64,000 bases of DNA from Octopus sinensis (GCF_006345805.1 NW_021833266.1:13528-77527); one strand, 5' to 3'. Positions 7,750-64,000 are shown, counted from the first letter of the stretch. Program-made: numbers and translations. The notes: generated by a model from the sequence alone, not told the origin.

Positions 7750-7823
7750 GCCCCGGTAGCTCAGTTGGTTAGAGCGTCGTGCTAATAACGCGAAGGTCTA
7801 GGGTTCGAGTCCCTGTCGGGGCA
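7750..7823 (+). tRNA. tRNA-Ile(AAT)
   Basis: Cloverleaf GCCCCGG/TCGGGGC acceptor, anticodon loop CTAATAA, T-loop TTCGAGT; T6 Pol III terminator at 7825-7830. Confidence 0.96.
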
Positions 7824-8989: not shown

Positions 8990-9460
8990 TGCTTCGTCAC
9001 GGGGCACTCAACGACGTCATCTCGAGAGCACTCAATGCTGCCGGTTTCCCGAATGTACTTAAACCAGTCGGTTTGGACAGAGGGGACGGCAAGCGCTTCG
9101 ATGGATGACAACCTTCCTATTTCGAAATGGCAAATGCCTGATCTGGGACGCTACGTGCACAGACGCTTGGTCCCCATCGGCAAAACTCTCATCAGCATCA
9201 TCTCCTGGATCGGCCGCGGCTTTGGCGGAAGACCACATGTCGAGAAGTACAGACAACCCGCCGCACAACATTCCTTTGTCCCTTTGGCTTTCGAGACCTT
9301 CGGACCGCAAACAGCCAAGTTATTGAAGGACGTCGAACTCCTTATCGCGAATTCCTGGACGTAAATCCCCCTGACTGAGACAAAGGATTTTGGCTACGCG
9401 AAAGCTATCCGTTTGACCGGGACATAACCGTTCTCTGGCAATGCTCGTAGATCGAGTTCT
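8990..9460 (+). mobile_element. CRE-clade non-LTR retrotransposon, RLE endonuclease 3' fragment
   Basis: Across frameshifts: [56 protein letters not shown]. Confidence 0.8.
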
Positions 9461-11718: not shown

Positions 11719-12566
11719 TGTCACATGCCCTGTTCGTTACCATGCCCCGCTCGTTACCATTGCTCTAAATTTTTAAAATTTCAATTTAAAATATTAAATG
11801 ATTGAAATATATTACTTATTAATTTAAAAATTAATATATTATGGATTTTTATTTTTCAATGCTTAAACCATTTCATTAAAAAACATAAATTAAGCATGCT
11901 GTTTTATCTCATGGTTATGGTTAGGGTATAGGTTAGGGTTAGGGTATAGGTTAGGGTTAGGGTGAAGGTTAGGTTTGGGTGAAGGTTAGGTAGGGTTAGG
12001 GTGAAGAGGGAATGGTTGGGTTTAGGGTTTGAAAAAATTTAAAGTAGAATTTTCGAATGGAGATACAAAGATTGTTCACATGAAAAGAATCAAAAAAGGA
12101 CAAATTTAATTTTTCGTTTTAAATTCAGATCTATATATGATTTTAACTAAAAAAACTGGATAAAGTTTGAGTTTTTATAAGAGATCTACAGATGATTTTA
12201 ACCTATCTTTTTACATTTCAAAAAATGTTTTAAATAAAACTAAAAAATGGTTAGAGTTAATTATAAAAACTATCAAATTATGTGCCTTTAAAGCGTTTCA
12301 CACAATTCACATTTTTAAAATATGTTTTAATGTGCTTATCAGTCAAAGGTTTGTTGTATAAAAATATTATTTTAATTTATTTGTTTTAAAGCATCTTTTA
12401 GTATATCATTAAATTGTACTCTAATTAACTAATATATAGGTTGAATTTATGTCGTTGTGATTGATTATTAATTTTTCTAAAAAATTGAAAATTCATTAAT
12501 CAATTATTTCTCAGAAATAATTCGGAGGTAAACGAGTGGGGCATAGTATCCCTGAGGCATGTGACA
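11719..12566. mobile_element. 848-bp non-autonomous TIR element (TGTCACATGCC...GGCATGTGACA)
   Basis: About 40-bp imperfect TIRs; flanks TAATA/TTATA (5-bp TSD, one mismatch); its removal restores the integrase reading DII-NLK. Confidence 0.87.
11913..12031 (+). repeat. Interstitial telomere-like (TTAGGG/GGTTAG variant) array
   Basis: ggttagggtataggttagggttagggtataggttagggttagggtgaaggttagg...; lies inside the 848-bp element. Confidence 0.88.
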
Positions 12567-25599: not shown

Positions 25600-26200
25600 T
25601 TTACTGACAAAAAAATATTTATAGAATAAAAGAAAGACTTGGTAGAAATGAGCGAAGAGAAAATATCTGCCGAGAAAAAAACAGATTTGGTAGAAATGGA
25701 AGGAGAGAAAATATCTCCAAAGAAAAAGAAAGATTTGGTAGAAATGGGCGAAGAAAAAATATTTAATGAGCAGAAGAAAGATGTTGTAGGAATGGCCAAA
25801 ATAAAAATATTTAATGATAAGAAAAAAAATGGGCAAAGAGAAAATATTGACTAAGACGAAGAAAGATTTTAAACAAATGATGATCAAAGAGAAATTTTCT
25901 ACAGACGAGATGGAAATTTTAGCACAAATGATTGTAGATACAATTTATACTGAAAGTAACACAGTTTTGTAGGAATGGTCCGAAAAAAATGTCTAATGAG
26001 AATTGAAAGTTTTAGTACAAATGATCAAATGAATATCTACAGAGATAAAGGAAGTTTTGGTACAAATGGCCAAAGAGTAAATATTTACTGAGAAGGAAGA
26101 TTGAGTACAAATAGGACAAGAGAAATCATTTAGTCCGGAAAGTAAAGAATTCAAACAAAAACACTAATTGTATCAAAGAGAAAATTTTTACTGAGATGAA
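25600..26200 (+). repeat. 48-bp minisatellite with a decay gradient; first units encode DLVEMxxEKIxxxKKx
   Basis: ga(c/t)ttggtagaaatg-type starts at 25636, 25684, 25732, 25780; progressively degenerate copies to ~26200. Confidence 0.85.
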
Positions 26201-34977: not shown

Positions 34978-35601
34978 TTATAACTCATTATTCCTGGCCT
35001 GCCTTTCCTTCCATGCCTGGGGAGCATATTTTGGCATCTGCCTTTCCACTGCCCTCACAAAATCGCTCTTCTCTGGACATTGTAGACACGTGTCTTCTGC
35101 ATTCCAATCATTCAATATTTTCTTGAGTTGTTTAATCGGCATTTTGTTAAAATTAGCAGCAACCAAATCAATTGGCTTGTCTATAAATTTATAAAATGGT
35201 AGAAAACCGTATTTTAGTGAGCAAATAATATCATTTTGGTTGTTCAGTGATTGACATATTTTTTCTGTGGGGAGGTATGAGAGAGGACGAGTTATTTCGT
35301 TCAACATGGAGGTTGCTGATGTCTCACTTCCCCCCACTGCGTAACACTTGAAATTAGATTTTTTATTTTTTACAAATCGGGATTCTTTTCCTGTGGCTTG
35401 CTTACAAAGGCTGATTATTTTGTTTTTTATCAAGTCAGGGTCACTTTTTTCAGACTTATTGAGAGATGAAGTTACTTTTTGGAGAAACGTTTGGCACACT
35501 TTTATATATTTTTTATTATTTTTACCTTCACAAGTTTGTTTTGCCTCAAAAACTGTAGACAGACACGACAATATAGTCAGACACAACAAAACAGTATACA
35601 T
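34978..35601 (-). CDS. MANF: MANF/ARMET (saposin-like plus SAP domain), ER protein
   Basis: Signal peptide; TCE|VC..C..KESRF|CYAVGG..SAT..EKIC..ICSLKY|DK..KQLKKILNDW..CLQCPEKSDF..KY; C-terminal NNEL. Confidence 0.93.
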   Translation of the reverse strand: MYTVLLCLTILSCLSTVFEAKQTCEGKNNKKYIKVCQTFLQKVTSSLNKSEKSDPDLIKNKIISLCKQATGKESRFVKNKKSNFKCYAVGGSETSATSMLNEITRPLSYLPTEKICQSLNNQNDIICSLKYGFLPFYKFIDKPIDLVAANFNKMPIKQLKKILNDWNAEDTCLQCPEKSDFVRAVERQMPKYAPQAWKERQARNNEL

Positions 35602-35694
35602 GTAAGTCACTAATTGGTCAATTCAAACATAATAATTTATTATATTCAAAAATAAAAAACAAATTTTATTTTATAACCAATTAAACAAAAACAC

Positions 35695-37962: not shown

Positions 37963-40900
37963 TTAAAAATGCCAAAAAATAAATGTTAAACTAATTTTAA
38001 AGAGTCCCGGATAGTGAACGTTTACTTCCGTGTGGTGTTGTATTCCGGGAATCATTAAGACGGTTTTTGTACGGATAGCTTTTATGTCCATCATCTATAA
38101 CAGGGGTGTCAAACATGCGGCCCTCAGCGTACTTTACCAAACATAAGTGCGGTCTGATTTAATGGCTATAAAATGCAAAGAATTATTTTTTATTTTTTTA
38201 CATTTAATTAAAATTTTTAATCGTATTTTTAAATCTTGTTTGTTAATGTCACATGCTTCTTCTGGAATAAAAAAGAAACCCTCCTTGAAAGATGAATGGA
38301 GAGTGTTTCAAGATAAATGGGAACTTCTCTATTTTTGCACAATGGTTGATGGAAAAATACATTGTTTCATATGTAACAAGTTTATTGCTATACCGAAAGA
38401 ATACAACCTAAAGAGGCATTATCAATCTAATCATCTATCATACAATTATTTCGAAGGTATTAAGTTGCTTATTAACCAAGAAGGTCCAATGCGTGTTTCA
38501 AAGCTAAATGAATTGCGAAAAAATTTATCTGCGTTACAAACTCATTTCACAAAAAATCATAATCGAAGTACTGCATTAGTCACTGCAAGCTATGAAATCA
38601 GCAGAATGCTTGTAGTAAATGGAAAATCATATTGTGATGGTGATTTTATCAAACAATGCCTTGTAAAAACAGCGAATATTATTTGTCCAGACGACGCCCA
38701 CTTGTTTAAAGATATTAACAAGAAATACTGTTGCCGAACACATTAATGAAATGGCATTGAATTTGAAACACCAATTAAAGTCTGATTTGTTAAAATTCGA
38801 ATATTTTTCAATTGCAATCGATGAAACAGTCGACGTCGTTGGAATTACACAATTAGCAATCTTTTTTAGAGCCTGTGATTCAGATTTTAATATTTATGAA
38901 GAATTTCTCGAACTGGTACCAATGCACGATACTACTACAAGTAAAGATATCTTTATAAAACTTCTACAAATTCTTTTTGAATATGGGTTTGATTTGAAGA
39001 AGCTTGTATGTTTATGCACTGATGGTGCTCCGAATATGGTTGGACGACATGCTGGCGTTGCCGCCAATTGCGAGCTGAAATAGAAAAGGTAAATCCCGGG
39101 TCATCATTTGCTCATTTTCATTGTATTATTCATCAGCAATATTTGTGCTCAAAGATATTAAAAATGGAAAATACCATTAGTTTGGTCACGAAAACAGTAA
39201 ACTATATTAAAGGTCATCCCCTCAACCACCGGCAGTTTAGTAAACTGCTGACAGATATTAATAATCAGTTCAGCGACATTCCTTTTTATACTCCAGTCCG
39301 CTGGTTATCACTTCACAAAGTTGTTAAAAGATTTTATTTGTTGAGATCGGAAATAATTTTATTTATGGAGATGAAAGGGCAAAACACAGACGAAATGAAA
39401 AGTCAATCTTGGATCAAAGATTTAGCATTTGCAGTGGATATTACCACACATATGAACGACCTTAATTTAGAATTGCAGGGCAAAGACAAGCTCATAACTC
39501 AGTTGTCAGATCATATCAAGTGTTCTATTTCGAAAATAAAATTATGGAAGTTTCAGCTATTACAGTATGAAATTTTCTAAAAAAATTCAGCAAACTCTTT
39601 TTCTTCGTCTTAATTATCCATAAAAACTAAATATAAAAGTTATTTTTCATTATAATGCCAATTTTTAATTTATTAAATTTGACCATTTTGATCTACCTGC
39701 AGTGAAAAGAGGCCTTTATTTATTTATAACTTTAAATCAAAAAAACAAAGATTAGTATTTCGTCAAACTTCCTTTACAATTATAGACTGAATATTCTTCT
39801 GGCATCGAATTATATAATTCCCTAATAAAACTGTCATCAATTGCCTCCCATTCCTCTTTCGTAATTTTCCATAAGTCCTGTACTGTTTCAGGGACCTTTA
39901 ATCGTATTTTTGACTTTAGCAAACACCAAACATGCTCAATTATATTGAGATCCGGTGATTGACTTGCCAATACTCTACTATAGTAATGCCACTGTTATTT
40001 AAAAAATCTCTTGTAGATTTGGATGTGTGGCAAGTTGCCCCATCTTGCTGAAATTTGTAATTTGATGTATATAAATCATTTAGTCCTTCAGATATAATAG
40101 ATTGATAACGTGCAGAATTTAGTTTTTCATTGCATAATATTAAACTTCTTTTGCCATCAAATCGTATCGCTCCCCATACCGTTATGCTAGGGGCAAATTT
40201 GACGGTTTCTGAAGTGTATTTTTTTTCATATCTCATTGAAGGTGGTCTTCTGACATATTCTCTTGAATTGAAGAGCTGAATTCGACATTCGTCCGAAAAA
40301 ATAACAAATTCCCAGGCCATATTAAACATCGACTGACACCAATATTTTCGAGCCATCATATGTCGACACGTAAGTCAAGGTTTTTTGACAGCAATCCTCC
40401 CGAATAAATTATACCTCCTCAATGTACGTCTAACTGTATCTATACTCACGGAATTATCAAAATTGATCGATTTTTTAAGTTCAAAAGCTGTTTTTTTGGG
40501 ATATTTTTTAGATGTCCTGACAAGAATCCTTTCTTTTCTAGGAGATAATTTCCTCTTCGCTCCAGTGTGAATACGGTCAAAATAGCCAAAACCAGATATG
40601 TAACGTTGAAATATTTTTTGGATCGCACATCGAGAGATTTTAAGTTCTTTTGATACTTGTCGCTGACTCATTCCATTTTTCAAAAAACTAATAACTTTTT
40701 TACGATTTTCAAAAGATACACGAGGCATGAAATAGAATTAACACGTTTTAGTTAGATTTAAATGGATATTTAACAAAAAAATGTAATTAAATCTAAATAT
40801 ATTTTAAATAAATAAAGTGCCCTCTTTCATTGCATGGCCTAGAAAAGGTCAAATTTAATAAATTAAATAAAATTGGCATTATAATGAAAAATAACTTTTA

Positions 40901-51378: not shown

Positions 51379-51450
51379 GCCTACGTAGTTTAGCGGTTAG
51401 AATTCCTCGTTGTGGCCGAGGGGATCCGGGTTCGACTCCCGGCGTAGGCA
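51379..51450 (+). tRNA. tRNA-His(GTG)
   Basis: GCCTACG/CGTAGGC acceptor, anticodon loop TTGTGGC, T-loop TTCGACT; T6 terminator follows. Confidence 0.96.
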
Positions 51451-53140: not shown

Positions 53141-53518
53141 CTATTTGAACATTTTTTCGGCAGGAGTGGCATTATCAGGTGCTGTGGCCACTTTGAGGAA
53201 CGCGATCAAATCATCACGGTCTTCCTTCTTCTTTAAGCCAGCAAACACCATTTTTGTCCCCGGAATATAAGCCTTTGGATTAGTCAAATAGACATCCAGT
53301 GTGTCTTCTCTCCCAAATATAGCTTAATTAATAATCAATGAATTCTCACGTTTAGATTTGTTGGCAGCTGTGTAGGTGTAATTTGGGGACTGGCCTGGTC
53401 CTCTACCGAAGATACCGGAAAGATTTGGCCCGGTTTTGTTTTTACCCGTGGAATGAGTCGTATGGCACTGAGAACAGCTTTTGACAAAAAGAGCTCTGCC
53501 TTTTACTGGGTCACCCAT
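53141..53518 (-). CDS. CYC: Cytochrome c, 2 exons
   Basis: [33 protein letters not shown]|..[32 protein letters not shown] plus a C-terminal extension. Confidence 0.96.
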
Positions 53519-54988: not shown

Positions 54989-55859
54989 TATTTTTTTGTT
55001 GATATTTGTAATTGGGAATTAGATAGAGTATAGTAGGTGTGATATGTATATTGATGTTATGTAATATTTTGTGGAACGAGTATTCATTTTAGTGTTAATT
55101 GAATTATTTATTTTTAATTCAATTGATTTGTAAGATTAAAAACTCAATATTTTTTGACTATTTATAGATTTAATTGATGTAATTCATATCATAAAAAATT
55201 GTAAATGTAATTCATCCGATGTAATTCATCCGGTGCCGCAGTGATAACACTAATTACGGCGTCACTCGTCAATCCGGGTGCATATTGGATGGATGGAACC
55301 CTCGTAATTCATATAAAAGAGTTTTAAAATATTTTTTTTGTAATTTTTTAAAAAATGAAATTAAGAATTATTAAAATTTTTTATTAAAAACCATAAAAAT
55401 GGTATAAGGTAAATTACAGAATTAATGATATTATTTTTGACTCAAAAACTCACTGGGCTCTTCCACTGCTGAACAAGAAAGATCATTTTGCCATGTTGCC
55501 TGGATATTTTAGTAACATGTACATCAGTATGCTTCAAGAGAATGAAATCATTTGTTGATGACATATTGTTAGCATTTCGGATTGGTGATATATTCTATCT
55601 ATTTTGTTGTTAAACATCATATTTTCATGACGTAACTTTAGCGGAGGGCCTGTTTCATCAATCAAACTATAAGTTTATGTAAATAGGAAAAAAACTGGTT
55701 TTGCAGTCACTAAGTTTTTTTAACGTATAGCTATTAATTTTCGAAATGAAATAAAGAGTTTGAAATTGATTATATGTGTAATTTTTTTTACTTTTAAAAA
55801 ATTTCAATAATCGGCGAAATTAAAAAAATTTGAATTTTAGCATGTGAATAAAAAGCCGG

Positions 55860-56000
55860 TTTAACAAAAAGAGTTAACAAAATCAACAGTATGTATGTTG
55901 TGTGGTATCCTCGATTAATAAATAGCTCGTATGACCTTTTAGGCATACTATCAATTAATTTCCGAATATTTTCAGATGGCAATTCGTTCCAAATTTTCAT
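55860..56000 (-). mobile_element. Tc1 transposase C-terminal scrap
   Basis: KIWNELPSENIRKLIDSMPKR..RGYHTTY. Confidence 0.7.
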
Positions 56001-56004
56001 TAAT

Positions 56005-59000
56005 TTGACTTGAGATCAAGTTTATTTTTTGCAGGATTTAATGAATACTTTTGCTTCATTATGCTCCAAACATGTTCCATTTGGTTCATGTATAACTCTT
56101 TCATGAAGCCAGTCAAAATTCCTGTAGTGTTCTAATAGTTCAGAATATACTGAACTGAATAATTCTGCTGTATTCACATATATACATAATTCCTCCGTTA
56201 GCCTAATTTTCTGATCTTTTAAATCTGAAATAATTGCCTCATTTCCAATATCTACAAGGATCTTTAGAAATATGCTATCGACCCCTTGTAAATGTGCACA
56301 TACATTTACATCTAAGCTTACTTTTTGACATATGTCCACAACTATGAAGATTTGAAGGAGGCATTCAAATCATCAGCAGGCGTCCCTCTTGGATTAATTG
56401 GCAGAGTTTGTCTAAAAGCACCTGCTAATACAACTATTGCTCTCCCAAACAACAGTTTTTCACAATTTTTGGTATCTCTATATGTTCTGTCGCTGCTTCA
56501 AATGCGCCCTTATGAGCCATTGTGGATTCAACCCAAACGATTAACTTAGAATTCATAACTCTATGACCCGCAACTAAATTTTTTTCACAGTATTGTAAGA
56601 AGGATTTAACGGAATGTTGAATGTGCTGTTCGTCCGCCATCTAAAAGAGTTAAAGGAATTCCAGAGGATGCTACTGCTAGTGCTATTTAATTGTCGCTTC
56701 TAACCTTCGCTAAAAATAAATTTAGAAGATAAGTCTTACCTGTACCACCCAGTGCATCAATAAAAATAATAGAACCATTTTCTTATTGGATGACTAGGTT
56801 AATTTCTCTGTATATTTTCAACTGATCAGCTAATAATCTATGTTCTCTTTCCTCCACAATTGTTCGGAGTTCTTCTAAATTATAATGTTCATCTAAAGTA
56901 TTTATATTATGAATATCGCGGATTTTAAAACCAAATTCACTTAAACTCTTACCTACGACAGATATTAACAATCTGTCTATCATGATTAATCCAATGTTGA
57001 AAATCTCTTCATCAAAACTGGATCTATTCTTCTCTTTTAATATATCTTCGCACATAATTTCTCGATGACCTTCCCATAATTGCTTAGGATTTACCTTAGT
57101 CGCGATGGAGAATCTGCAATCGCGGCTTCTGTTAAAGTCTGATTCCAGTGATGGTCATTCTCTAAAAGACTTAATTTAAAACAGGCTTCTCTGTATGTTT
57201 CGCAGAGTATACTATTAACAGTCCGGTGACCAGTAAATAATTCTGGCCCCCAATTTTGTGAAAAAGTAACCTAACAAAATAACATTCAAAATTATTCGGA
57301 TGCACGGTATATACTCTACCGGGTAGGGTAGAGTCTACCCAATGCTTCCGTACTTACAATATTGTTATGCCCGTTTACTGGCTCTCCTCTTATCCTTCTT
57401 TATGTTTCTTTCTGGCCACATCCCACGTATAATATCTAGGAACATCTGTCCGACATAATTCGAAGTAGGCCATATTCGTTAAATTTCTTGGATTCATAAC
57501 TTGATTACGGGTAGTTTCTTCTGTAAAATATATCCTTTGCCTATTTTCCAAGTGCACCCCTAAATGCATTACTAATGGATATCTTTCATAAATCGGATAT
57601 CCAAAAATTCTCCATTTTCCTTTATTACTGCAGATAAATCGTCTATGCTGGAAAAAACTTGGCTCGTCATGTTGCTCAATTGTAAAAATTGCTTGATCCG
57701 ACCCTTTATTAATGTATTTACATACACATTTAATGGATCTAATAGAATTACAAAATCCAACATTAATATGTGCATCAAAAATATTACTTAACAGTGGATT
57801 ATAAGGCACCACCTACTTGTTGTCAACTGTTGTTTCATTTTCTTTTCCTTCTTGGAGAGTTACAGTAAATCCTTCTTCAGCTGCGCCCCTTCTCTGGTAA
57901 AGCAAAAATCCATTTTCACCAGTTTGCGTATTATATATTAAGTTTTTAGGGTACCCCTTTGAACAATTACAATCTTTCATACACGGTGATGATCTGTTAT
58001 ACATGCCACATAGACCATGATCATATTTCTTTTAATGATCTCGTATAATTCTCTATCTTCACTTGGATTTAGAAATTCTGCCCGTATGCAATCGTCTATT
58101 TCTGTAGCTCTAATTTTAGTTACTAACCATAACAATATGTGTATATGCGGCAAACCTCTTTTTTGCCACTCTACTGTATACATGAGGCATCTTGTATTTC
58201 CAAATATCTGTCCCTTAGCGAGAAGATTTATAATGTTATCGACTTTCTGTTTAAAAGCTTTTGCCCTATAAATATGTTATCACTAATTTCTGGCCATTTT
58301 GGATTACATGTAAAAGTGATAAACAAATCTGGTGTTCCGTAATTTCATTGCATCTTGTGTGCATTCATGCATATATCTTGGTCCTCCTGTGAATCACGAC
58401 GGCAAAATAACCATTTGACCTACATCAGTTAAATTACCATAATTAATTATTCCATCTCTTAGATGTATATACTCTTCTGCTTGGAGTTTTTCCTGATTTA
58501 AACGAATATAGAGAAGTCTCCCTGCCTCTATCGTTGCATACATATCTACAATAAACTGATTAAATAAATGTCCTGTCCGATTAATCATGTTGAAATCTTG
58601 CTCTCGTATCATTCACCTATAAGAATAAAATTCCATACAACTGATTTTTTTAGTTGCTTTTGAATCAGTTAATGGATTAATATGCATTATCCTGATATTA
58701 TACCCATCCTCTCCTCTGGGAAATATTAATATGTACTGAAGAGCATCGTATGATCGATGCGTTTTTGAAATTCTCATTGATTTAGTGGATATTTTGTTTA
58801 TGATATTGTCTCTTGTGTCATATTGTTGTCCTACTATTAAAATTCCTACCTGGTTTGATGTTGGTGCGTTGTATCGACGCTCATGTTCATTTGCAGGTGT
58901 TCTATCAACATGTATAACCACTTTATAATCGCTCTCGTTTTTATCGAGGATATTCTCGATATGCAAGATTTTTGCCTGAGAGGTATTAATGGACCTCATC

Positions 59001-59030
59001 ATGAGTGTTGAGGACATTCAAGTTGTTCTT
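56005..59030 (-). mobile_element. Helitron Rep/helicase, degenerate, ends missing
   Basis: RSYDALQY..PRGEDG; FNQFIVDMY; GTPDLFITFTCNP; VEWQKRGLPHIHILLW (HUH); MVPYNPLL..AHINV; Walker A GGTGKTY; many stops and indels. Confidence 0.95.
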
Positions 59031-59044
59031 CTACATAGCTAAAC

Positions 59045-60499
59045 TAATGATTTTTTTCATTTTTGATTGATTTTTATTTAGCTTTTAAGTTGTTTTTAAT
59101 TCAATGATTCTTTCATTGAGTATTATTTTAGTTATTTTTTTCTAAAGATAACATTTACAGAAGAATGTTGCTCTTCAGAATTAAAAAAATTGGTCGAAAC
59201 TTACAGCTTAGCAATGATACATTTTCTCGGAGAATTGTGAGCATATCTGACGATCTTCATTACCAGCTACTCACTGAATCCAAGTTTTTCGGTCACTATT
59301 CTATTGCTTTTGACATCACTAAAGATATCAGTGATACAGAACAAATGGCCGTGTTTATTCGGGATGTCATGCCTGACTTCAAAATTTACGAAGAATTTCT
59401 CTCGTTACGTAGTTTTCATGGTTCTACTAAAAGAGTTGATATATTTCGCGAATTTCGCGATTGTCTTGAAATGGCACATTTGAATCCTTCAAAAATGTTT
59501 TCAATTGCTACAGATGGATGTCCTTCTATGGTTGGATGGAAAACTGGGTTTCAAGGTCTCGTAGCTGGATGGCGAGTAGATGATGAGTTGAGTCCTGTGA
59601 TTTGGCATCACTGCATCCTGCATCAAGAAAATTTAGTCGCGAAATCTATAAAAATGGACCATGTTACAGAAACGGTCATTTCGATCGTAAATTTTATTTG
59701 ATCCAGTGCTTTAAATCACCGGAATTTCAAGATATTTCTCGAGGATGTTGACGCCGAGTATGGAGATTTGCTTATGCATACAACTGTACGATGGTTGAGT
59801 CGGGCAGCATGTCTAAAAAGGTTATATAAATTTAAACTAAATCGCATTTAGATTTTATGACCTTCTCCCGAAGATTATGCATTTTATTGATAATAAGATA
59901 TTTTATCCTCAGCTTACTGATAAGGAGTGGATTGCAGATTTAGCATTTATGGTAGATATTTCTACGCACCTTTCAATTTTGAATACTTCTATGCAGGGTA
60001 AGGGCAAACTATGTCATGAATTGTACGGAATGGTTTCTGAATTTATCGAAAAACTACATATATCAACTAGATTAATTGAAATGCAGGCAGATTTACAACT
60101 TACCGCGCTATTTAAGTCAAGTGAACTATTGGATTTTTGGGGTCGAATTCCACAGTGGAAATATTCGAATTTGGTCGATAATGCTCAAAAAAATGCATCA
60201 GTCTTCGGATCAACGTATACATGTGAAGCTCTTTTCAGCAAACTTACGCAAATAAAAACAAAGTATCGAAATCGATTGACTGATGGACACCTAAATCAAC
60301 TTTTACGCACATCGTGTTCGACTTTTACTCCCTCTTTCGACAAAATAATAAAAGCCAAACAGAATCAAGTCTCGCATTGATTTTTATTACTTAATAAAGC
60401 CTTCTTTTCATTAATAACATAAAATATTTTTTGTGCGGCCCGCAAAGATATTCTTAATTATCGATTTGGCCCATGCGCTAAAAAGGTTGAGAACCCCTG
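59045..60499 (+). mobile_element. Second hAT (GTF2IRD2/SPIN-like) transposon, 5'-truncated
   Basis: SIAFDITKD, ATDGCPSM, HCILHQE, VRWLS, DLAFMVD, GSTYTCEALFS; right TIR GGTTGAGAACCCCTG followed by CTCTAAAC. Confidence 0.9.
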
Positions 60500-60746
60500 C
60501 TCTAAACAATTATTTTAATTTAAATTACAAAATTTATAAAAAAATTTATTATTGCCAATATTTGAGACTGTGTCTATCTTTTTTCAGAAACATAAATTTT
60601 TTTTTAAATCAAGAAAAGTGTCCTAGCTATATTTTCACTGAAAAAAGATTAGAGAGCATGGTCGTGTTGAACTGCAAAAAATGCCCTTTGGGATCGGTCT
60701 CACCTGGACTCATTGTGCAGCCAGCGATTGCTGTAAGGAAGTCGGT

Positions 60747-61467
60747 CTATATGGTTCTCAGGGTGGTCGATAGACCTCACCTGATTCTCCACGACGATAG
60801 TCGTAGAGTGCGATGCAGCTGGTGGTGGACCACCAGGCTATATGGTTCTCAGGGTGGTCGATAGACCTCACCTGATTCTCCACGACGATAGTCGTAGAGT
60901 GCGATGCAGCTGGTGGTGGACCACCAGGCTATATGGTTCTCAGGGTGGTCGATAGACCTCACCTGATTCTCCACGACGATAGTCGTAGAGTGCGATGCAG
61001 CTGGTGGTGGACCACCAGGCTATATGGTTCTCAGGGTGGTCGATAGACCTCACCTGATTCGCCACGACGATAGTCGTAGAGTGCGATGCAGCTGGTGGTG
61101 GACCACCAGGCTATATGGTTCTCAGGGTGGTCGATAGACCTCACCTGATTCTCCACGACGATAGTCGTAGAGTGCGATGCAGCTGGTGGTGGACCACCAG
61201 GCTATATGGTTCTCAGGGTGGTCAAAGACCTCACCTGATTCTCCAAGACGATAGTCGTAGAGTGCGATGCAGCTGTGGTGGACCACCAGGCTATATGGTT
61301 TCAGGTGGTCAAAGACCTCACCTGTTCTCCAGACGATAGTCGTAGAGTGCGATGCAGCTGGTGGTGGACCACCAGGCTATATGGTTCTCAGGGTGGTCAA
61401 AGACCTCACCTGATTCTCCACGACGATAGTCGTAGAGTGCGATGCAGCTGGTAGTGGACCACCAGGC
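60747..61467. repeat. GC-rich tandem array, 8 units of ~91 bp
   Basis: Unit starts at 60747, 60838, 60929, 61020, 61111, 61202, 61291, 61377; no spacers. Confidence 0.98.
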
Positions 61468-61669
61468 ATCGGAGACCTAACAGTACGAGGCCGTCCGCAT
61501 ATATCCCAAAGGACATTTTTAATATGTTAATTACTATATAAAGATCGAAATAACTTATTATATTTATTAATTGTTTTATTATATGTAGTTTAATTATAAA
61601 AAATTAAAAGCATAATTAATTTTCTCAATTTTTTTATATTTAGATAAATGAGAAACATTTTATAAAATT

Positions 61670-61780
61670 ATTATTTTTTTTCATTTTTGATTGATTTTTA
61701 TTTGGCTTTTAAGTTGTTTTTAATTCAATGATTCTTTCTTTGAGTATTATTTTAGTTATTTTTTTCTAAAGATAACATTC
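61670..61780 (+). repeat. About 115-bp AT-rich segment duplicated at 59045-59157
   Basis: ttcatttttgattgatttttattt.gcttttaagttgtttttaattcaatgattctttc.ttgagtattattttagtt..ctaaagataacatt in both. Confidence 0.85.
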
Positions 61781-61849
61781 TATTGCATTTCTCCTCAATA
61801 TAGAAAACGATCTGAAAAAACCCAATTCATTTCTTTTGTCAAAAATACA

Positions 61850-63950
61850 AAATCTCTACAAAAGCTGAAAAAAGAACGGAGATTGATAGTATTAACGGAG
61901 AACTCTTGAAATATTCACCAACTTTACTGATGTATGAACTACCCTTCATCTTAAATAATATATTTACTAAACACAAGCCTGTCCCACTAAGGTGAGGAGA
62001 TTTAATACTTAAACAGAAACCCGAGAAGCCGGCTGGACCTGTGAAAAACGTCAGATCGATTATCCTTTGGAAACTAATGTCCTTGATTAATAGGATTTCT
62101 TCTAAGTAGACAAAAACGTATTTCTGAGTTAATGTGGATTAAGAAGAGAAAGGTTCACTCCATACGCTGTATAGACACGCAATGGATATGTGACACGATG
62201 TAGAAATTCCAGAAACTGTTCAGATATAAAGAATTAATCTTTCCCAAATATTTGATAATATAATTGTGACAGTCCGAATAAAATACACGCCGAATAATCT
62301 ACACTTGTCACAAATGGCTGAAAAAATTAGAATCTAAAAATTAGTATGAAAAAAATCAATAATTGATTATTTATTTTAGTAGAATCACATTTATGTTTTA
62401 TATTAAAAAAGCGTGAAACATGCGTGTAGTGAGATTATTTAAGGAAACCTGGACAAAATCAAAAAATGAAAGACTCCACTTTGATACATCGTCAATCGAG
62501 CGGCATGAGCGATACAGGCTCACAAAATTGGGAAAGAATTTCTTTTGAAAATGGAAAAACATATTTTCGAAAAATGGGCTTAAATTGCGTTTTTTCTGTG
62601 AAGATGAAATCGATTAAAGCTTAAGTGCGTGAGGTCCAACTTAATAAATAAAATTTAGGCGGAACATAACTATAACCACTTTGGGAGAGACCGGCTTTTT
62701 TCGAAATTAAGAAATCTCTATTTCTTAATTTCGAAAAACATGTACGTGGGAGGCCTCGTGCTCCTTGGGTACAAGGGCAAGTCGAAAGGTTAATGATTTA
62801 AAATCGATTTGTAGATTTAATCAAAGCATAAAACGCTGGATATCGTCGGCAAGTTCTTCTCAAAATTGTTTTGGACGATATCGCGAATGCATAAAGGACA
62901 TCGTGTATGATTACAATAACAGCATTCATTCTTCGACAAAAAAAATCCCTTTTTATATATTCATGGGTGTTGAAAATCTGGAAGGATTGATGAAGGGGAA
63001 TGGAGCAACTTTTAGCCTATGATTCAACTGGATTATCAGAGGCACGAGAAAGTGCATTATAAAACTTAATTATTGCTGGCGAAAAAATGATTGAAAAAAG
63101 AAAATGGAGATACGACGAAGAAAATATCAATGTCGGAACGACTGTGCTTTTAAGGTCTCAAGCGTCAAATTAATTTTTAGACAGGACAACGATGCCAATG
63201 TTCGGCAGTATCCGCTGTACGATGGACTTGATGTTAATAAGTATATTGTTGTCGAGCGAAGAAATGATCTCTATGTTATCGAAAAGGAGGACGGTGAGCG
63301 GTTAACACGGAATTCATATTTCTCGATTAGCTAAAATTGATTAATTTTCATAAATCCATAATAAAAATAATTTTTTATTTAAATTAACGATAATTTATAT
63401 GAAAATTTTATTAGGATAACCTAAAATGGAATAACAATATTCAAACGTAAAGTTAACTGCGTAAATTGAGTGTGGTTGGTTTTGTTTATATAAATTAGTA
63501 AAAAGGTTAATGAATTTTACATTAAAAATCATATTTTTAATAATTAACATTTTGTTGTGTAAATTTTAATTTCAGTAAAATAAAGAATGTAATTATTCGG
63601 CGTGTATTTTTTCGGACTGTGACATAAATTAATCTACAAAAAAACGATTAAGTTTATTTGGGACCTTGCAAGACGAGGATGCGTGTTCTACATGCGAACG
63701 CCAAAGTTTGGCTAATTTACAGCAGTTTCACCAATGAAAAAGATATCAACGAAATAAGAAAAGTGTTTAATCAAACCCCTGGAGTATGAATAAAAAAACG
63801 GAGATCACAACTGTCAAAATAAAGAGTCAATTGACAGACAAAAAATGGAGAACAAACATATTTGGATCATCTATTGGAGACTGGGAATATTTTCCAGCGA
63901 ATAAAAATGGCCTCAAAGGTTTTTCATAATGAAATTTGGCTTTAGACTTT
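61850..63950 (+). mobile_element. RTE-like LINE RT remnant, interrupted by the 62265-63624 element
   Basis: IDSINGELLKY..ILNNIF..QKPEKPAGPVKNVRSI..LSQIFDNI. Confidence 0.6.
62265..63624 (+). mobile_element. TIR-flanked, intron-containing integrase DNA transposon (Ginger-like), internally deleted
   Basis: About 34-bp TIR TGT(G/C)ACAGTCCGAA(T)AAAATACACGCCGAATAAT; AEHNYNHFGRDRLF; HVRGRPRAPWVQGQVER|FNQSIK; YDYNNSIHS; NVGTTVLLR|QDND; introns 62634-62658, 62789-62814, 63155-63180. Confidence 0.9.
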
Positions 63951-64000
63951 TTGAAATAAAATTATTAGTTGTCATTCTTTAACCATAAGATTATAAATGG

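What the first reader, a model, noticed from the sequence alone, without database searches (positions are those of the whole stretch)
60747..61467. 91-bp GC-rich tandem array in which each unit folds into three hairpins
Seen per unit: H1 TCAGG..GGTC-GATA-GACC..CCTGA; H2 CTC.ACGAC-GATA-GTCGT.GAG; H3 CTGGTGG-TGGA-CCACCAG. In units 6-8 the H1 loop is AAA instead of GATA while the stem is kept. The first five units are almost identical. The unit length is not a multiple of 3, so it is not a coding repeat, and it is strikingly GC-rich for this genome. Inference: a head-to-tail concatemer of a small structured RNA or ssDNA (rolling-circle or retrozyme-like), a structured retroelement UTR repeat, or a young satellite. 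I found no canonical hammerhead or HDV core.
Basis: partly seen in the sequence, partly recalled or inferred. Interest (0 to 1): 0.7.

Follow-up and report, generated by a model that had tools for sequence, protein, structure and literature searches.

The report
Young palindrome-rich tandem repeat in transposon debris
The 8 x 91-bp hairpin-forming repeat is real, but it looks like an ordinary, recently expanded non-coding repeat inside a small inverted-repeat-bounded, transposon-like cassette, not a concatemer of a functional RNA.

Summary
There are 8.0 head-to-tail copies of a 91-bp unit at 60747-61467. The array is 54.5% GC in a 33.5% GC window. Each unit holds three short palindromes that fold better than shuffled controls on both strands, as RNA and as ssDNA.

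Nothing supports an RNA function. No Rfam family matches at E<=1, and there is no hammerhead core. No stem change among the units is compensated, and about 7 of 10 mutational events fall in stems and break pairs. No second copy was found in the window or in the viral, metagenome, prokaryote-genome or protein collections.

New here: an 18-bp inverted repeat (17/18 complementary) brackets the array at 60677-60694 and 61503-61520. No shuffle (0 of 2000) and no genomic control pair (0 of 143) reaches that length. The locus is a transposon graveyard: a hAT fragment, a dead Helitron and a 115-bp flanking duplication.

The layout (flank, core repeats, flank, with inverted repeats and a palindrome at each unit junction) matches tandem-repeat-carrying non-autonomous DNA elements such as pearl/DTC84 and DINE-1/HINE. 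The microsatellite, the 3' palindrome and multiple copies were not found, so membership is unproven.

Verdict: a young transposon-associated proto-satellite of low interest. The source genome could not be searched for further copies.

The parts
60747..61467 (.). Tandem array of 8 units of 91 bp (units 6 and 7 are shortened to 89 and 86 bp). It forms the central-repeat module.
   Evidence: TRF. Unit alignment. A covariance model finds all 8 units and nothing else in the window.
60758..60784 (.). Palindrome H1 of unit 1, TCAGG-GT-GGTC GATA GACC-TCA-CCTGA. It recurs every 91 bp. The loop is AAA in units 6-8.
   Evidence: Folds. Alignment.
60787..60808 (.). Palindrome H2 of unit 1, CTC-C-ACGAC GATA GTCGT-A-GAG. 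The C/A mismatch on the + strand becomes a U-G pair on the - strand.
60819..60836 (.). Palindrome H3 of unit 1, CTGGTGG TGGA CCACCAG. It sits at the 3' end of every unit, directly at the unit junction, and the array ends with it.
   Evidence: Sequence read.
60677..60694 (+). Left arm of the 18-bp inverted repeat, AAAAATGCCCTTTGGGAT. It contains the palindromic core CCCTTTGGG.
   Evidence: No shuffle (0 of 2000) and no genomic control pair (0 of 143) reaches 18 bp.
61503..61520 (-). Right arm of the inverted repeat, ATCCCAAAGGACATTTTT on the + strand, 17/18 complementary to the left arm. AT-rich DNA begins right after it.
   Evidence: In the fold of the whole island it pairs with the left arm as the closing stem.
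60695..60746 (.). Unique 52-nt spacer between the left inverted-repeat arm and the first unit. It is not a degenerate unit.
   Evidence: Local alignment to the consensus finds only 8-9 nt matches.
61468..61502 (.). Unique 35-nt spacer between the last unit and the right inverted-repeat arm. There is no microsatellite.
60641..60676 (.). A 30-nt moderately GC-rich tail plus an A6 run (T6 on the - strand) outside the left arm. It is a possible subterminal tail if the cassette is a mobile element read on the - strand. The boundary is inferred, not shown.
   Evidence: Sequence. No significant stem-loop here.

Best explanation
The array is a recently expanded, non-coding tandem repeat (a proto-satellite). 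It forms the central-repeat module of a GC-rich cassette of about 0.85 kb bounded by an 18-bp inverted repeat. The cassette lies among dead transposons.

The layout is flank, then core repeats in one orientation, then flank. A short inverted repeat lies inside both flanks, and a palindrome sits at the end of every core repeat. This is the layout of tandem-repeat-carrying non-autonomous DNA transposons: pearl/DTC84 'TR-MITEs' and DINE-1/HINE elements of the Helentron group.

Shown here:
- the array itself;
- the palindromes;
- the flanking inverted repeat;
- the transposon-rich context;
- the absence of any known RNA motif and of structure-preserving variation.

Inferred:
- The three hairpins are DNA palindromes built into the monomer.
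- They extrude as hairpins in single-stranded DNA during replication or repair.
- The junction palindrome H3 then acts as the hot spot for slipped-strand or unequal-exchange gain and loss of whole units.
- One such burst recently produced the five near-identical units, next to three older, decaying ones.
- The cassette was once mobile.

No cellular function is implied.
For: Array and near-identity of units 1-5.

Decay at the right-hand end: units 6-8 carry about 10 mutational events. About 7 lie in stems, which make up 55% of positions, and all of these break pairs. None is compensated. The stems are therefore not under purifying selection.

The palindromes fold equally well as ssDNA (z -3.5) and on both strands.

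The 18-bp inverted repeat brackets the array, 52 and 35 nt from its ends. It exceeds all 2000 shuffles and all 143 genomic control pairs, and it closes the fold of the whole island.

H3 sits at every unit boundary and the array ends exactly after it. DTC84 core repeats likewise each end in a palindrome, proposed there as the hot spot for copy-number change (PMC3879986).

Transposon context:
- hAT transposase fragment 59165-60380, with its 3' terminal repeat ending about 60499-60505.
- Helitron Rep/PIF1 remnant on the - strand below 59010.
- Reverse-transcriptase ORFs elsewhere in the window.

Literature: short arrays dispersed inside Helentron-type non-autonomous elements and transposon graveyards are a described source of satellite DNA, and satellite monomers often contain palindromes (PMC7492417, PMC8268682, PMC12628747, PMC4067079).
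Against: - Only one copy is available, so mobility, true termini and target-site features cannot be shown.
- No copy of the monomer or of the flanks exists elsewhere in the 64-kb window.
- No copy was found in any searchable collection.
- The microsatellite typical of pearl/DINE-1/HINE elements is absent.
- No convincing palindrome follows the outer inverted-repeat arm.
- No unambiguous target-site duplication is present.
- The high GC content of the cassette is not explained.
- Three independent hairpins, all with 3-4 nt loops, in 91 nt (z down to -4.65) is more structure than most satellite monomers show, so a single-strand function cannot be formally excluded.
Confidence: 0.5

Rival explanations
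1. The array is a locally born minisatellite in non-mobile sequence. A 91-bp stretch of unique or old transposon-derived DNA that happened to contain palindromes was duplicated in place by replication slippage. The flanking inverted repeat belongs to that older sequence and has nothing to do with transposition.
For: The array is single-copy in the window and absent from every collection searched. There is no target-site duplication, microsatellite or 3' palindrome. The pattern of young units beside decaying ones fits in-place turnover.
Against: The 18-bp inverted repeat, placed roughly symmetrically around the array, is far beyond chance. It also has no obvious role in a purely local duplication. 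The whole island differs sharply in composition from its surroundings, 53.7% against 33.5% GC, as an inserted sequence would.
Confidence: 0.3
2. The array is a set of protein-binding palindromes. It would be a regulatory or replication-related repeat of a mobile element or virus-like sequence, such as enhancer, insulator or origin-type repeats, or transposase-binding subterminal repeats. The three inverted motifs would be bound as double-stranded DNA by dimeric proteins.
For: There are three distinct inverted motifs per unit, each with a 4-bp spacer. The array is GC-rich, transposon-like and bracketed by an inverted repeat. Tandem arrays of binding sites in transposon control regions are known from established knowledge.
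Against: No adjacent gene or ORF belongs to the cassette. The neighbouring hAT ends about 140 bp before the GC-rich island and about 170 bp before the left inverted-repeat arm, and a related hAT lacks any such array. The motifs are not conserved in units 6-8. There is no match to viral contigs. No candidate binding protein is known.
Confidence: 0.1
3. The array would be a head-to-tail concatemer of a small structured RNA or ssDNA unit that is cut into 91-nt monomers. It would be retrozyme- or viroid-like, possibly with a new self-cleaving motif.
For: Folding is better than shuffled controls, strongest on the - strand (z -4.65 for the monomer, -6.16 for the dimer). A U-G pair completes H2 only on the - strand. 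The two changes in the ancestor of units 6-8 hit the H1 loop, not the stem.
Against: - No Rfam family matches at E<=1.
- No hammerhead core elements are present.
- The monomer is far shorter and more GC-rich than metazoan retrozymes (PMC7229834).
- 0 of 25 pairs covary, and all stem variants are disruptive.
- The structure is three independent short hairpins with no long-range rod or catalytic pocket.
- It folds equally as DNA.
- Only 8 copies sit at one locus.
Confidence: 0.05
4. The five identical units are an assembly artefact that inflates or collapses the true copy number.
For: Units 1-3 and 5 are identical over 91 bp each. Assemblers can miscount such repeats.
Against: The array has unique variants (units 4, 6, 7, 8) and clean unique junctions on both sides. 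At most the copy number, not the existence of the array, would be affected.
Confidence: 0.03

Closest known systems
pearl / DTC84 tandem-repeat-containing MITEs of bivalves (PMC3879986)
   Same: The modular layout is the same: left flank, a few core repeats all in one orientation, right flank. A short inverted motif lies in both flanks, apparently subterminal on one side and terminal on the other. [quoted passage not shown] Copy number is small (1-5 there, 8 here). The element is non-coding.
   Different: The core repeat is 91 bp rather than about 160 bp. No microsatellite adjoins the array. The AA target dinucleotide cannot be verified. There is no sequence similarity. Only one copy is known here, whereas DTC84 is high-copy. 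Three palindromes per unit here against one there.
DINE-1 / HINE, non-autonomous Helentrons (PMC4067079; Cg_HINE, PMC7492417)
   Same: Both have a pair of subterminal inverted repeats (11-15 bp there, 18 bp here, and self-palindromic as in the mite HINEs) and central tandem repeats that can make up half or more of the element. Read on the - strand, the 5' arm abuts TT, and the 3' arm is followed by a 30-nt tail and then T6. This roughly matches subTIRs 2-4 nt from the 5' end and 38-60 nt from the 3' end, with T strings at the boundaries. A Helitron-type Rep/helicase remnant lies 1.6 kb away.
   Different: No palindrome follows the 3' arm. There is no separate inverted repeat next to the 5' arm and no microsatellite. 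No autonomous partner sharing the termini was identified. The neighbouring RepHel remnant is truncated, so it cannot be typed as a Helentron.
Metazoan non-LTR retrozymes (hammerhead-bearing tandem repeats, PMC7229834)
   Same: Both are short head-to-tail repeats in an invertebrate genome whose monomer is predicted to be highly structured.
   Different: No hammerhead or other known ribozyme is present. The monomer is 91 bp against 150-450 bp, and GC is 54.5% against below 45%. The monomer does not fold into a rod-like or branched structure.
Classical satellite DNA
   Same: Both are tandem, non-coding and homogenised, with edge units more diverged and palindromes within the monomer (PMC12628747).
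   Different: The array is only 721 bp and single-locus as far as can be seen. It is embedded in a cassette rather than forming a long heterochromatic block.

Membership tests
Tandem-repeat-containing MITE (pearl/DTC84 type) | Central array of core repeats, all in one orientation, between two unrelated flanking modules | tested here: met
   8 units at 60747-61467. The flanks of 52 and 35 nt are unique and unrelated to the unit.
Tandem-repeat-containing MITE (pearl/DTC84 type) | Short inverted repeat in the two flanking modules | tested here: met
   18 bp, 17/18 complementary, at 60677-60694 and 61503-61520. No shuffle (0 of 2000) and no genomic control (0 of 143) reaches it.
Tandem-repeat-containing MITE (pearl/DTC84 type) | Microsatellite segment adjoining one end of the array | tested here: not met
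   Direct reading of 60695-60746 and 61468-61502. TRF reports no short-period repeat there.
Tandem-repeat-containing MITE (pearl/DTC84 type) | Palindrome near the end of each core repeat | tested here: met
   H3, CTGGTGGTGGACCACCAG, occupies positions 73-90 of the 91-bp unit.
Tandem-repeat-containing MITE (pearl/DTC84 type) | AA (TT) dinucleotide at both termini as putative target site | tested here: inconclusive
   AA follows the right arm (61521-61522), and A runs precede the left side (60641-60646, 60676-60681). In 33% GC DNA this carries no information, and the termini are not defined by a second copy.
Tandem-repeat-containing MITE (pearl/DTC84 type) | Many dispersed copies with variable core-repeat number | not testable with these tools
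   There is no other copy in the 64-kb window. The source genome is not in the searchable collections.
HINE / DINE-1 (non-autonomous Helentron) | Pair of subterminal inverted repeats | tested here: met
HINE / DINE-1 (non-autonomous Helentron) | Palindrome or stem-loop between the 3' subTIR and the 3' terminus | tested here: not met
   ssDNA folds of 60620-60700 and 61495-61570 on both strands are no better than shuffles, with z from +0.2 to +1.2.
HINE / DINE-1 (non-autonomous Helentron) | Short inverted repeat complementary to the 5' subTIR within 1-12 bp, plus a microsatellite in the left flank | tested here: not met
   Only the internal CCCTTTGGG palindrome of the arm itself is present. There is no microsatellite.
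HINE / DINE-1 (non-autonomous Helentron) | Insertion within TT, with T strings at the element boundaries | tested here: inconclusive
   On the - strand, TT precedes the 5' arm, and a T6 run lies 30 nt after the 3' arm. This is compatible but uninformative in AT-rich DNA without an empty site.
HINE / DINE-1 (non-autonomous Helentron) | Autonomous Helentron partner sharing the termini | not tested
   The adjacent Rep/PIF1 remnant is truncated, with no termini recognisable. Its relatives are at most 57% identical, about 50% over most of the query.
Metazoan non-LTR retrozyme | Type I hammerhead ribozyme in each monomer | tested here: not met
   Rfam at E<=1 finds nothing on either strand. No CUGANGA or GAAA occurs in the dimer.
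Metazoan non-LTR retrozyme | Monomer 150-450 bp and GC below 45% (PMC7229834) | tested here: not met
   91 bp and 54.5% GC.
Metazoan non-LTR retrozyme | Expression as linear and circular monomeric RNA | not testable with these tools
   No transcript data are available.
Canonical Helitron terminus | 5' TC, 3' CTRR, and a 16-20 nt hairpin about 11 nt before the 3' end | tested here: not met
   Reading both strands of the unit and the flanks: H3 is followed by G-CTAT and H1 (- strand) by GAACCATATAG. There is no CTRR at either cassette edge.

The most novel reading that the evidence does not exclude
The 91-nt triple-hairpin unit is the monomer of a so-far undescribed small structured RNA or ssDNA replicon. 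It would be retrozyme-like but carry no known ribozyme, and would be processed from the - strand multimer, perhaps by a new self-cleaving motif or a host nuclease. The inverted-repeat-bounded cassette would be its genomic launch pad.
Probability: 0.04. Interest if true: 0.7.

Novelty: new member of a known kind. Interest (0 to 1): 0.2.

Why it matters
If the best explanation holds, this is one more example of how short tandem arrays arise and are carried inside non-autonomous DNA elements in transposon graveyards. It would be a seed for satellite DNA, here with an unusually palindrome-dense monomer.

It would be mildly useful to people annotating repeats in this genome. The genome appears to belong to an animal with 27-nt introns, so probably a myxobolid myxozoan or a dicyemid, where such elements are hardly described.

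It opens no long-standing question. Only the low-probability RNA-replicon reading would be of wider interest.

Tried and rejected
1. Known RNA families. An Rfam E-value scan of 59000-64000 and a gathering-threshold scan of the whole window found nothing at the array, only two tRNAs elsewhere.

2. Hammerhead core by pattern: absent.

3. Covariation within the array: none.

4. A covariance model of the unit, searched with filters off over the window: only the 8 units. The best other match has E 0.77.

5. Other copies:
- window pattern and BLAST searches: none;
- viral contigs, three patterns: one chance 19-mer hit (L001);
- JGI metagenome contigs, two patterns: none;
- prokaryote genome contigs: none, so there is no sign of bacterial origin;
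- all stop-free translations of the array used as a protein query, to catch arrays called as spurious ORFs: none.

6. Is the array part of the neighbouring hAT? No. Alignment with a related hAT (L002) shows the element ends at about 60499-60505, and L002 and L003 have no similar array.

7. Is the left or right flank a degenerate unit? No. The '71%' copy listed only reflects overlap with the array.

8. Are the three hairpins diverged copies of a ~30-nt sub-repeat? There is no significant similarity between them.

9. Canonical Helitron ends, or a target-site duplication for the common DNA transposon superfamilies at the inverted-repeat edges: none recognised by reading.

10. Close relatives of the adjacent Helitron, to inspect their upstream regions. 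The best hits reach at most 57% identity and come from scattered animals, so the comparison was not pursued.

11. Organism identification by exact protein look-up: not on record.

Full report
**Observation**

The array is real and sits exactly where stated. Tandem Repeats Finder gives 60747-61467, period 91, 8.0 copies, 97% matches and score 1344. It is by far the strongest tandem repeat in the window.

Aligning the eight units shows that units 1, 2, 3 and 5 are identical and unit 4 differs by one T>G change. Units 6-8 share GATA>AAA in the first loop and carry further private changes; units 6 and 7 are 89 and 86 bp long.

Folding is better than dinucleotide shuffles throughout:

| Molecule | z-score |
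|---|---|
| + strand RNA, monomer | -2.40 |
| - strand RNA, monomer | -4.65 |
| ssDNA, monomer | -3.52 |
| + strand RNA, dimer | -4.43 |
| - strand RNA, dimer | -6.16 |

Perfect GC-rich hairpins of this kind are rare elsewhere, with 5 in about 63 kb. The array is 54.5% GC in a 33.5% GC window and contains the most GC-rich 300 bp of the window. All six frames contain stops, and the longest open stretch is 56 codons.

**Is it an RNA?**

Every test available here is negative or neutral.

- Rfam finds nothing at E<=1 on either strand across 59000-64000. A tandem array presents every circular permutation of the unit, so a permuted ribozyme would also have been seen.
- Neither hammerhead core element (CUGANGA, GAAA) occurs in the dimer on either strand.
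- The predicted structure is three independent short hairpins joined by linkers. In multimers, the H3 arms of neighbouring units can also pair, as any tandem palindrome can. There is no rod-like or pocket-forming fold.
- Counting pairs across the units gives 0 of 25 pairs with a change on both sides.
- Reading the alignment, units 4 and 6-8 carry about ten mutational events. About seven fall in stems, which occupy 55% of positions. Each breaks a pair and none is compensated. The stems are therefore not visibly protected.
- The only 'structure-friendly' pattern is the two loop changes shared by units 6-8. These are inherited changes in one ancestral unit.
- The hairpins fold just as well as DNA, so the folding excess is a property of palindromic DNA and does not point to RNA.
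- The - strand folds slightly better, because a C/A mismatch in H2 becomes U-G. This is too little to assign a strand.

**What surrounds it**

The array is bracketed by an 18-bp inverted repeat: AAAAATGCCCTTTGGGAT at 60677-60694 and its complement, with one mismatch, at 61503-61520. The arms lie 52 and 35 nt from the array ends.

Among 2000 shuffles of the 150-nt flanks the longest one-mismatch inverted match was 15. Among 143 equally spaced genomic control pairs it was 16. The spacers between the arms and the array are unique sequence, not degenerate units. When the whole island is folded, the two arms form the closing stem.

The GC-rich island runs from about 60655 to 61520 and is 53.7% GC. 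It extends some 20-35 nt beyond the left arm but stops exactly at the right arm.

The neighbourhood is transposon debris:

- A 5'-truncated hAT transposase lies on the + strand at 59165-60380, with a Dimer_Tnp_hAT hit. Its 3' terminal repeat ends at about 60499-60505, as shown by alignment with a related hAT, L002. The array is therefore not part of that hAT.
- A decayed Helitron lies on the - strand below 59010, with Helitron_like_N and PIF1 hits.
- A 115-bp direct repeat (59041-59155 and 61665-61779, 95% identical) flanks the hAT fragment plus the array.
- Reverse-transcriptase ORFs lie further away.

**Search for relatives**

No other copy of the unit or of its flanks exists in the window. 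Pattern searches, BLAST and a covariance model run with filters off all agree.

Exact-pattern scans gave the following:

- viral contigs: one chance 19-mer hit;
- JGI metagenome contigs: nothing, with two patterns;
- prokaryote genomes: nothing.

A protein search with all stop-free translations of the array was meant to catch arrays mis-called as genes. It gave no hit.

The source genome itself is evidently not in the collections:

- The window's ORFs and its spliced proteins are not on record.
- The best hAT relatives are at most 64% identical.
- The best Helitron relatives are about 50% identical over most of the query, at most 57% on partial matches, and are scattered over frogs, nematodes, insects, spiders and cephalopods.

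The decisive comparison, other genomic copies, therefore could not be made.

**Best explanation**

The cassette has the architecture described for tandem-repeat-carrying non-autonomous DNA elements.

In DTC84/pearl elements, a left flank, 1-5 core repeats, a microsatellite and a right flank are combined. An 11-bp inverted motif is subterminal in one flank and terminal in the other. Every core repeat ends in a palindrome, which is proposed as the hot spot for copy-number change (PMC3879986).

These elements, together with DINE-1, are now classed as non-autonomous Helentrons (HINEs). HINEs have subterminal inverted repeats, a 3' palindrome, T strings at the ends and, in some copies, central tandem repeats that fill half of the element (PMC4067079, PMC7492417).

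Features present here:

- the two flanks;
- the inverted repeat, apparently subterminal on one side and terminal on the other;
- core repeats in a single orientation;
- a palindrome (H3) at each unit junction, with the array ending right after it.

Features absent or untestable here:

- The microsatellite is absent.
- A 3' palindrome outside the arm is absent.
- A separate inverted repeat next to the 5' arm is absent.
- Evidence of multiple copies or an empty site is lacking.

I therefore say the cassette works like, and probably descends from, such an element, and I do not file it as a member.

The mechanism I commit to is as follows:

- The palindromes are DNA features of the monomer.
- In single-stranded DNA during replication or repair they form hairpins.
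- Misalignment at the junction palindrome adds or removes whole units.
- One recent burst made the five near-identical units next to three older, decaying units.

The array, the palindromes, the inverted repeat and the decay pattern are shown. Hairpin-driven slippage and former mobility are inferred. Satellite monomers are known to carry palindromes frequently, and transposon graveyards are known to spawn such arrays (PMC12628747, PMC8268682).

**Rivals**

- **In-place minisatellite with an incidental inverted repeat (0.3).** It is not separable from the best explanation without the genome.
- **Array of protein-binding palindromes, as a regulatory or origin-like repeat (0.1).** It has no supporting gene or conservation.
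- **Structured RNA or ssDNA concatemer (0.05).** The absence of any ribozyme, of covariation and of retrozyme-like size and composition speaks against it (PMC7229834).
- **Mis-assembly (0.03).** It could change only the copy number.

**Verdict**

This is a new member of a known kind and of low interest. The most novel reading not excluded is a ribozyme-less 91-nt RNA or ssDNA replicon unit, with a probability of about 0.04.

Noticed in passing
window 59041-59155 and 61665-61779: A 115-bp AT-rich direct repeat (95% identical, 98% over 105 bp). It flanks a 2.5-kb block made of the 5'-truncated hAT fragment, an AT-rich spacer and the array cassette. The hAT is cut exactly at the end of the first copy. 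There is no target-site duplication and the ends are not LTR-like. How this duplication arose is unexplained.
   Followed up: partly
window 35181-35207, 35347-35373, 35499-35525 (- strand, MANF/ARMET gene 34978-35610) and 53323-53349 (- strand, cytochrome c gene 53141-53518): Four introns, each exactly 27 nt (GT...AG). Removing them restores the conserved CEVC, RF-CY and KY-DK junctions of MANF (junctions recalled from memory of human MANF) and the NKxK-5 residues-EDTL spacing of cytochrome c (Pfam Cytochrom_C hit). Introns this short are reported in animals only for myxobolid myxozoans (Henneguya salminicola, median 27 bp) and Dicyema japonicum (PMC13644364). The window therefore probably comes from such a parasite. 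The three MANF introns are in frame and stop-free, so the gene looks intronless to an ORF finder.
   Followed up: partly
window ~55600-59010, - strand: A decayed Helitron Rep/helicase (Helitron_like_N and PIF1 hits) with many stops and frameshifts. The helicase breaks off into sequence that by eye resembles the C-terminus of a Tc1/mariner transposase, but Pfam does not confirm this. The closest relatives are about 50% identical and scattered across distant animals.
   Followed up: partly
window 59165-60505 (+) and 38147-39580 (+): Two separate hAT (FAM200/ZBED5/GTF2IRD2-like) remnants. The second carries a Spin-doc zinc finger. Its ORF at 39068-39580 gives a local alignment score of 107 (no significance control) against the C-terminal ORF of the first, suggesting they are different copies. 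The 3' terminal repeat ...AAAAAGGTTGAGAACCCCTG is shared with a relative in an ENA assembly (L002).
   Followed up: partly
window 11913-12002: A degenerate interstitial TTAGGG-like repeat (GGTTAGGGTTAGGGTATA/GA...), about 15 units, 74% matches.
   Followed up: no
window 8990-9420: The second most GC-rich island of the window (54.7% GC over 300 bp). It has an open frame that by eye looks like a retroelement-derived protein fragment, but there is no Pfam hit.
   Followed up: partly
window 25610-25814: A 48/96-bp tandem repeat (4.3 copies, 76% matches), purine-rich and lysine/glutamate-rich when translated. It is possibly a coding repeat.
   Followed up: no
window 62800-63330 (+): An open-frame fragment that by eye resembles the C-terminal part of a retroelement or Maverick-type integrase. 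Pfam gives no hit.
   Followed up: partly
window 7750-7823 and 51379-51450: tRNA-Ile(AAT) and tRNA-His(GTG) genes, both on the + strand.
   Followed up: no
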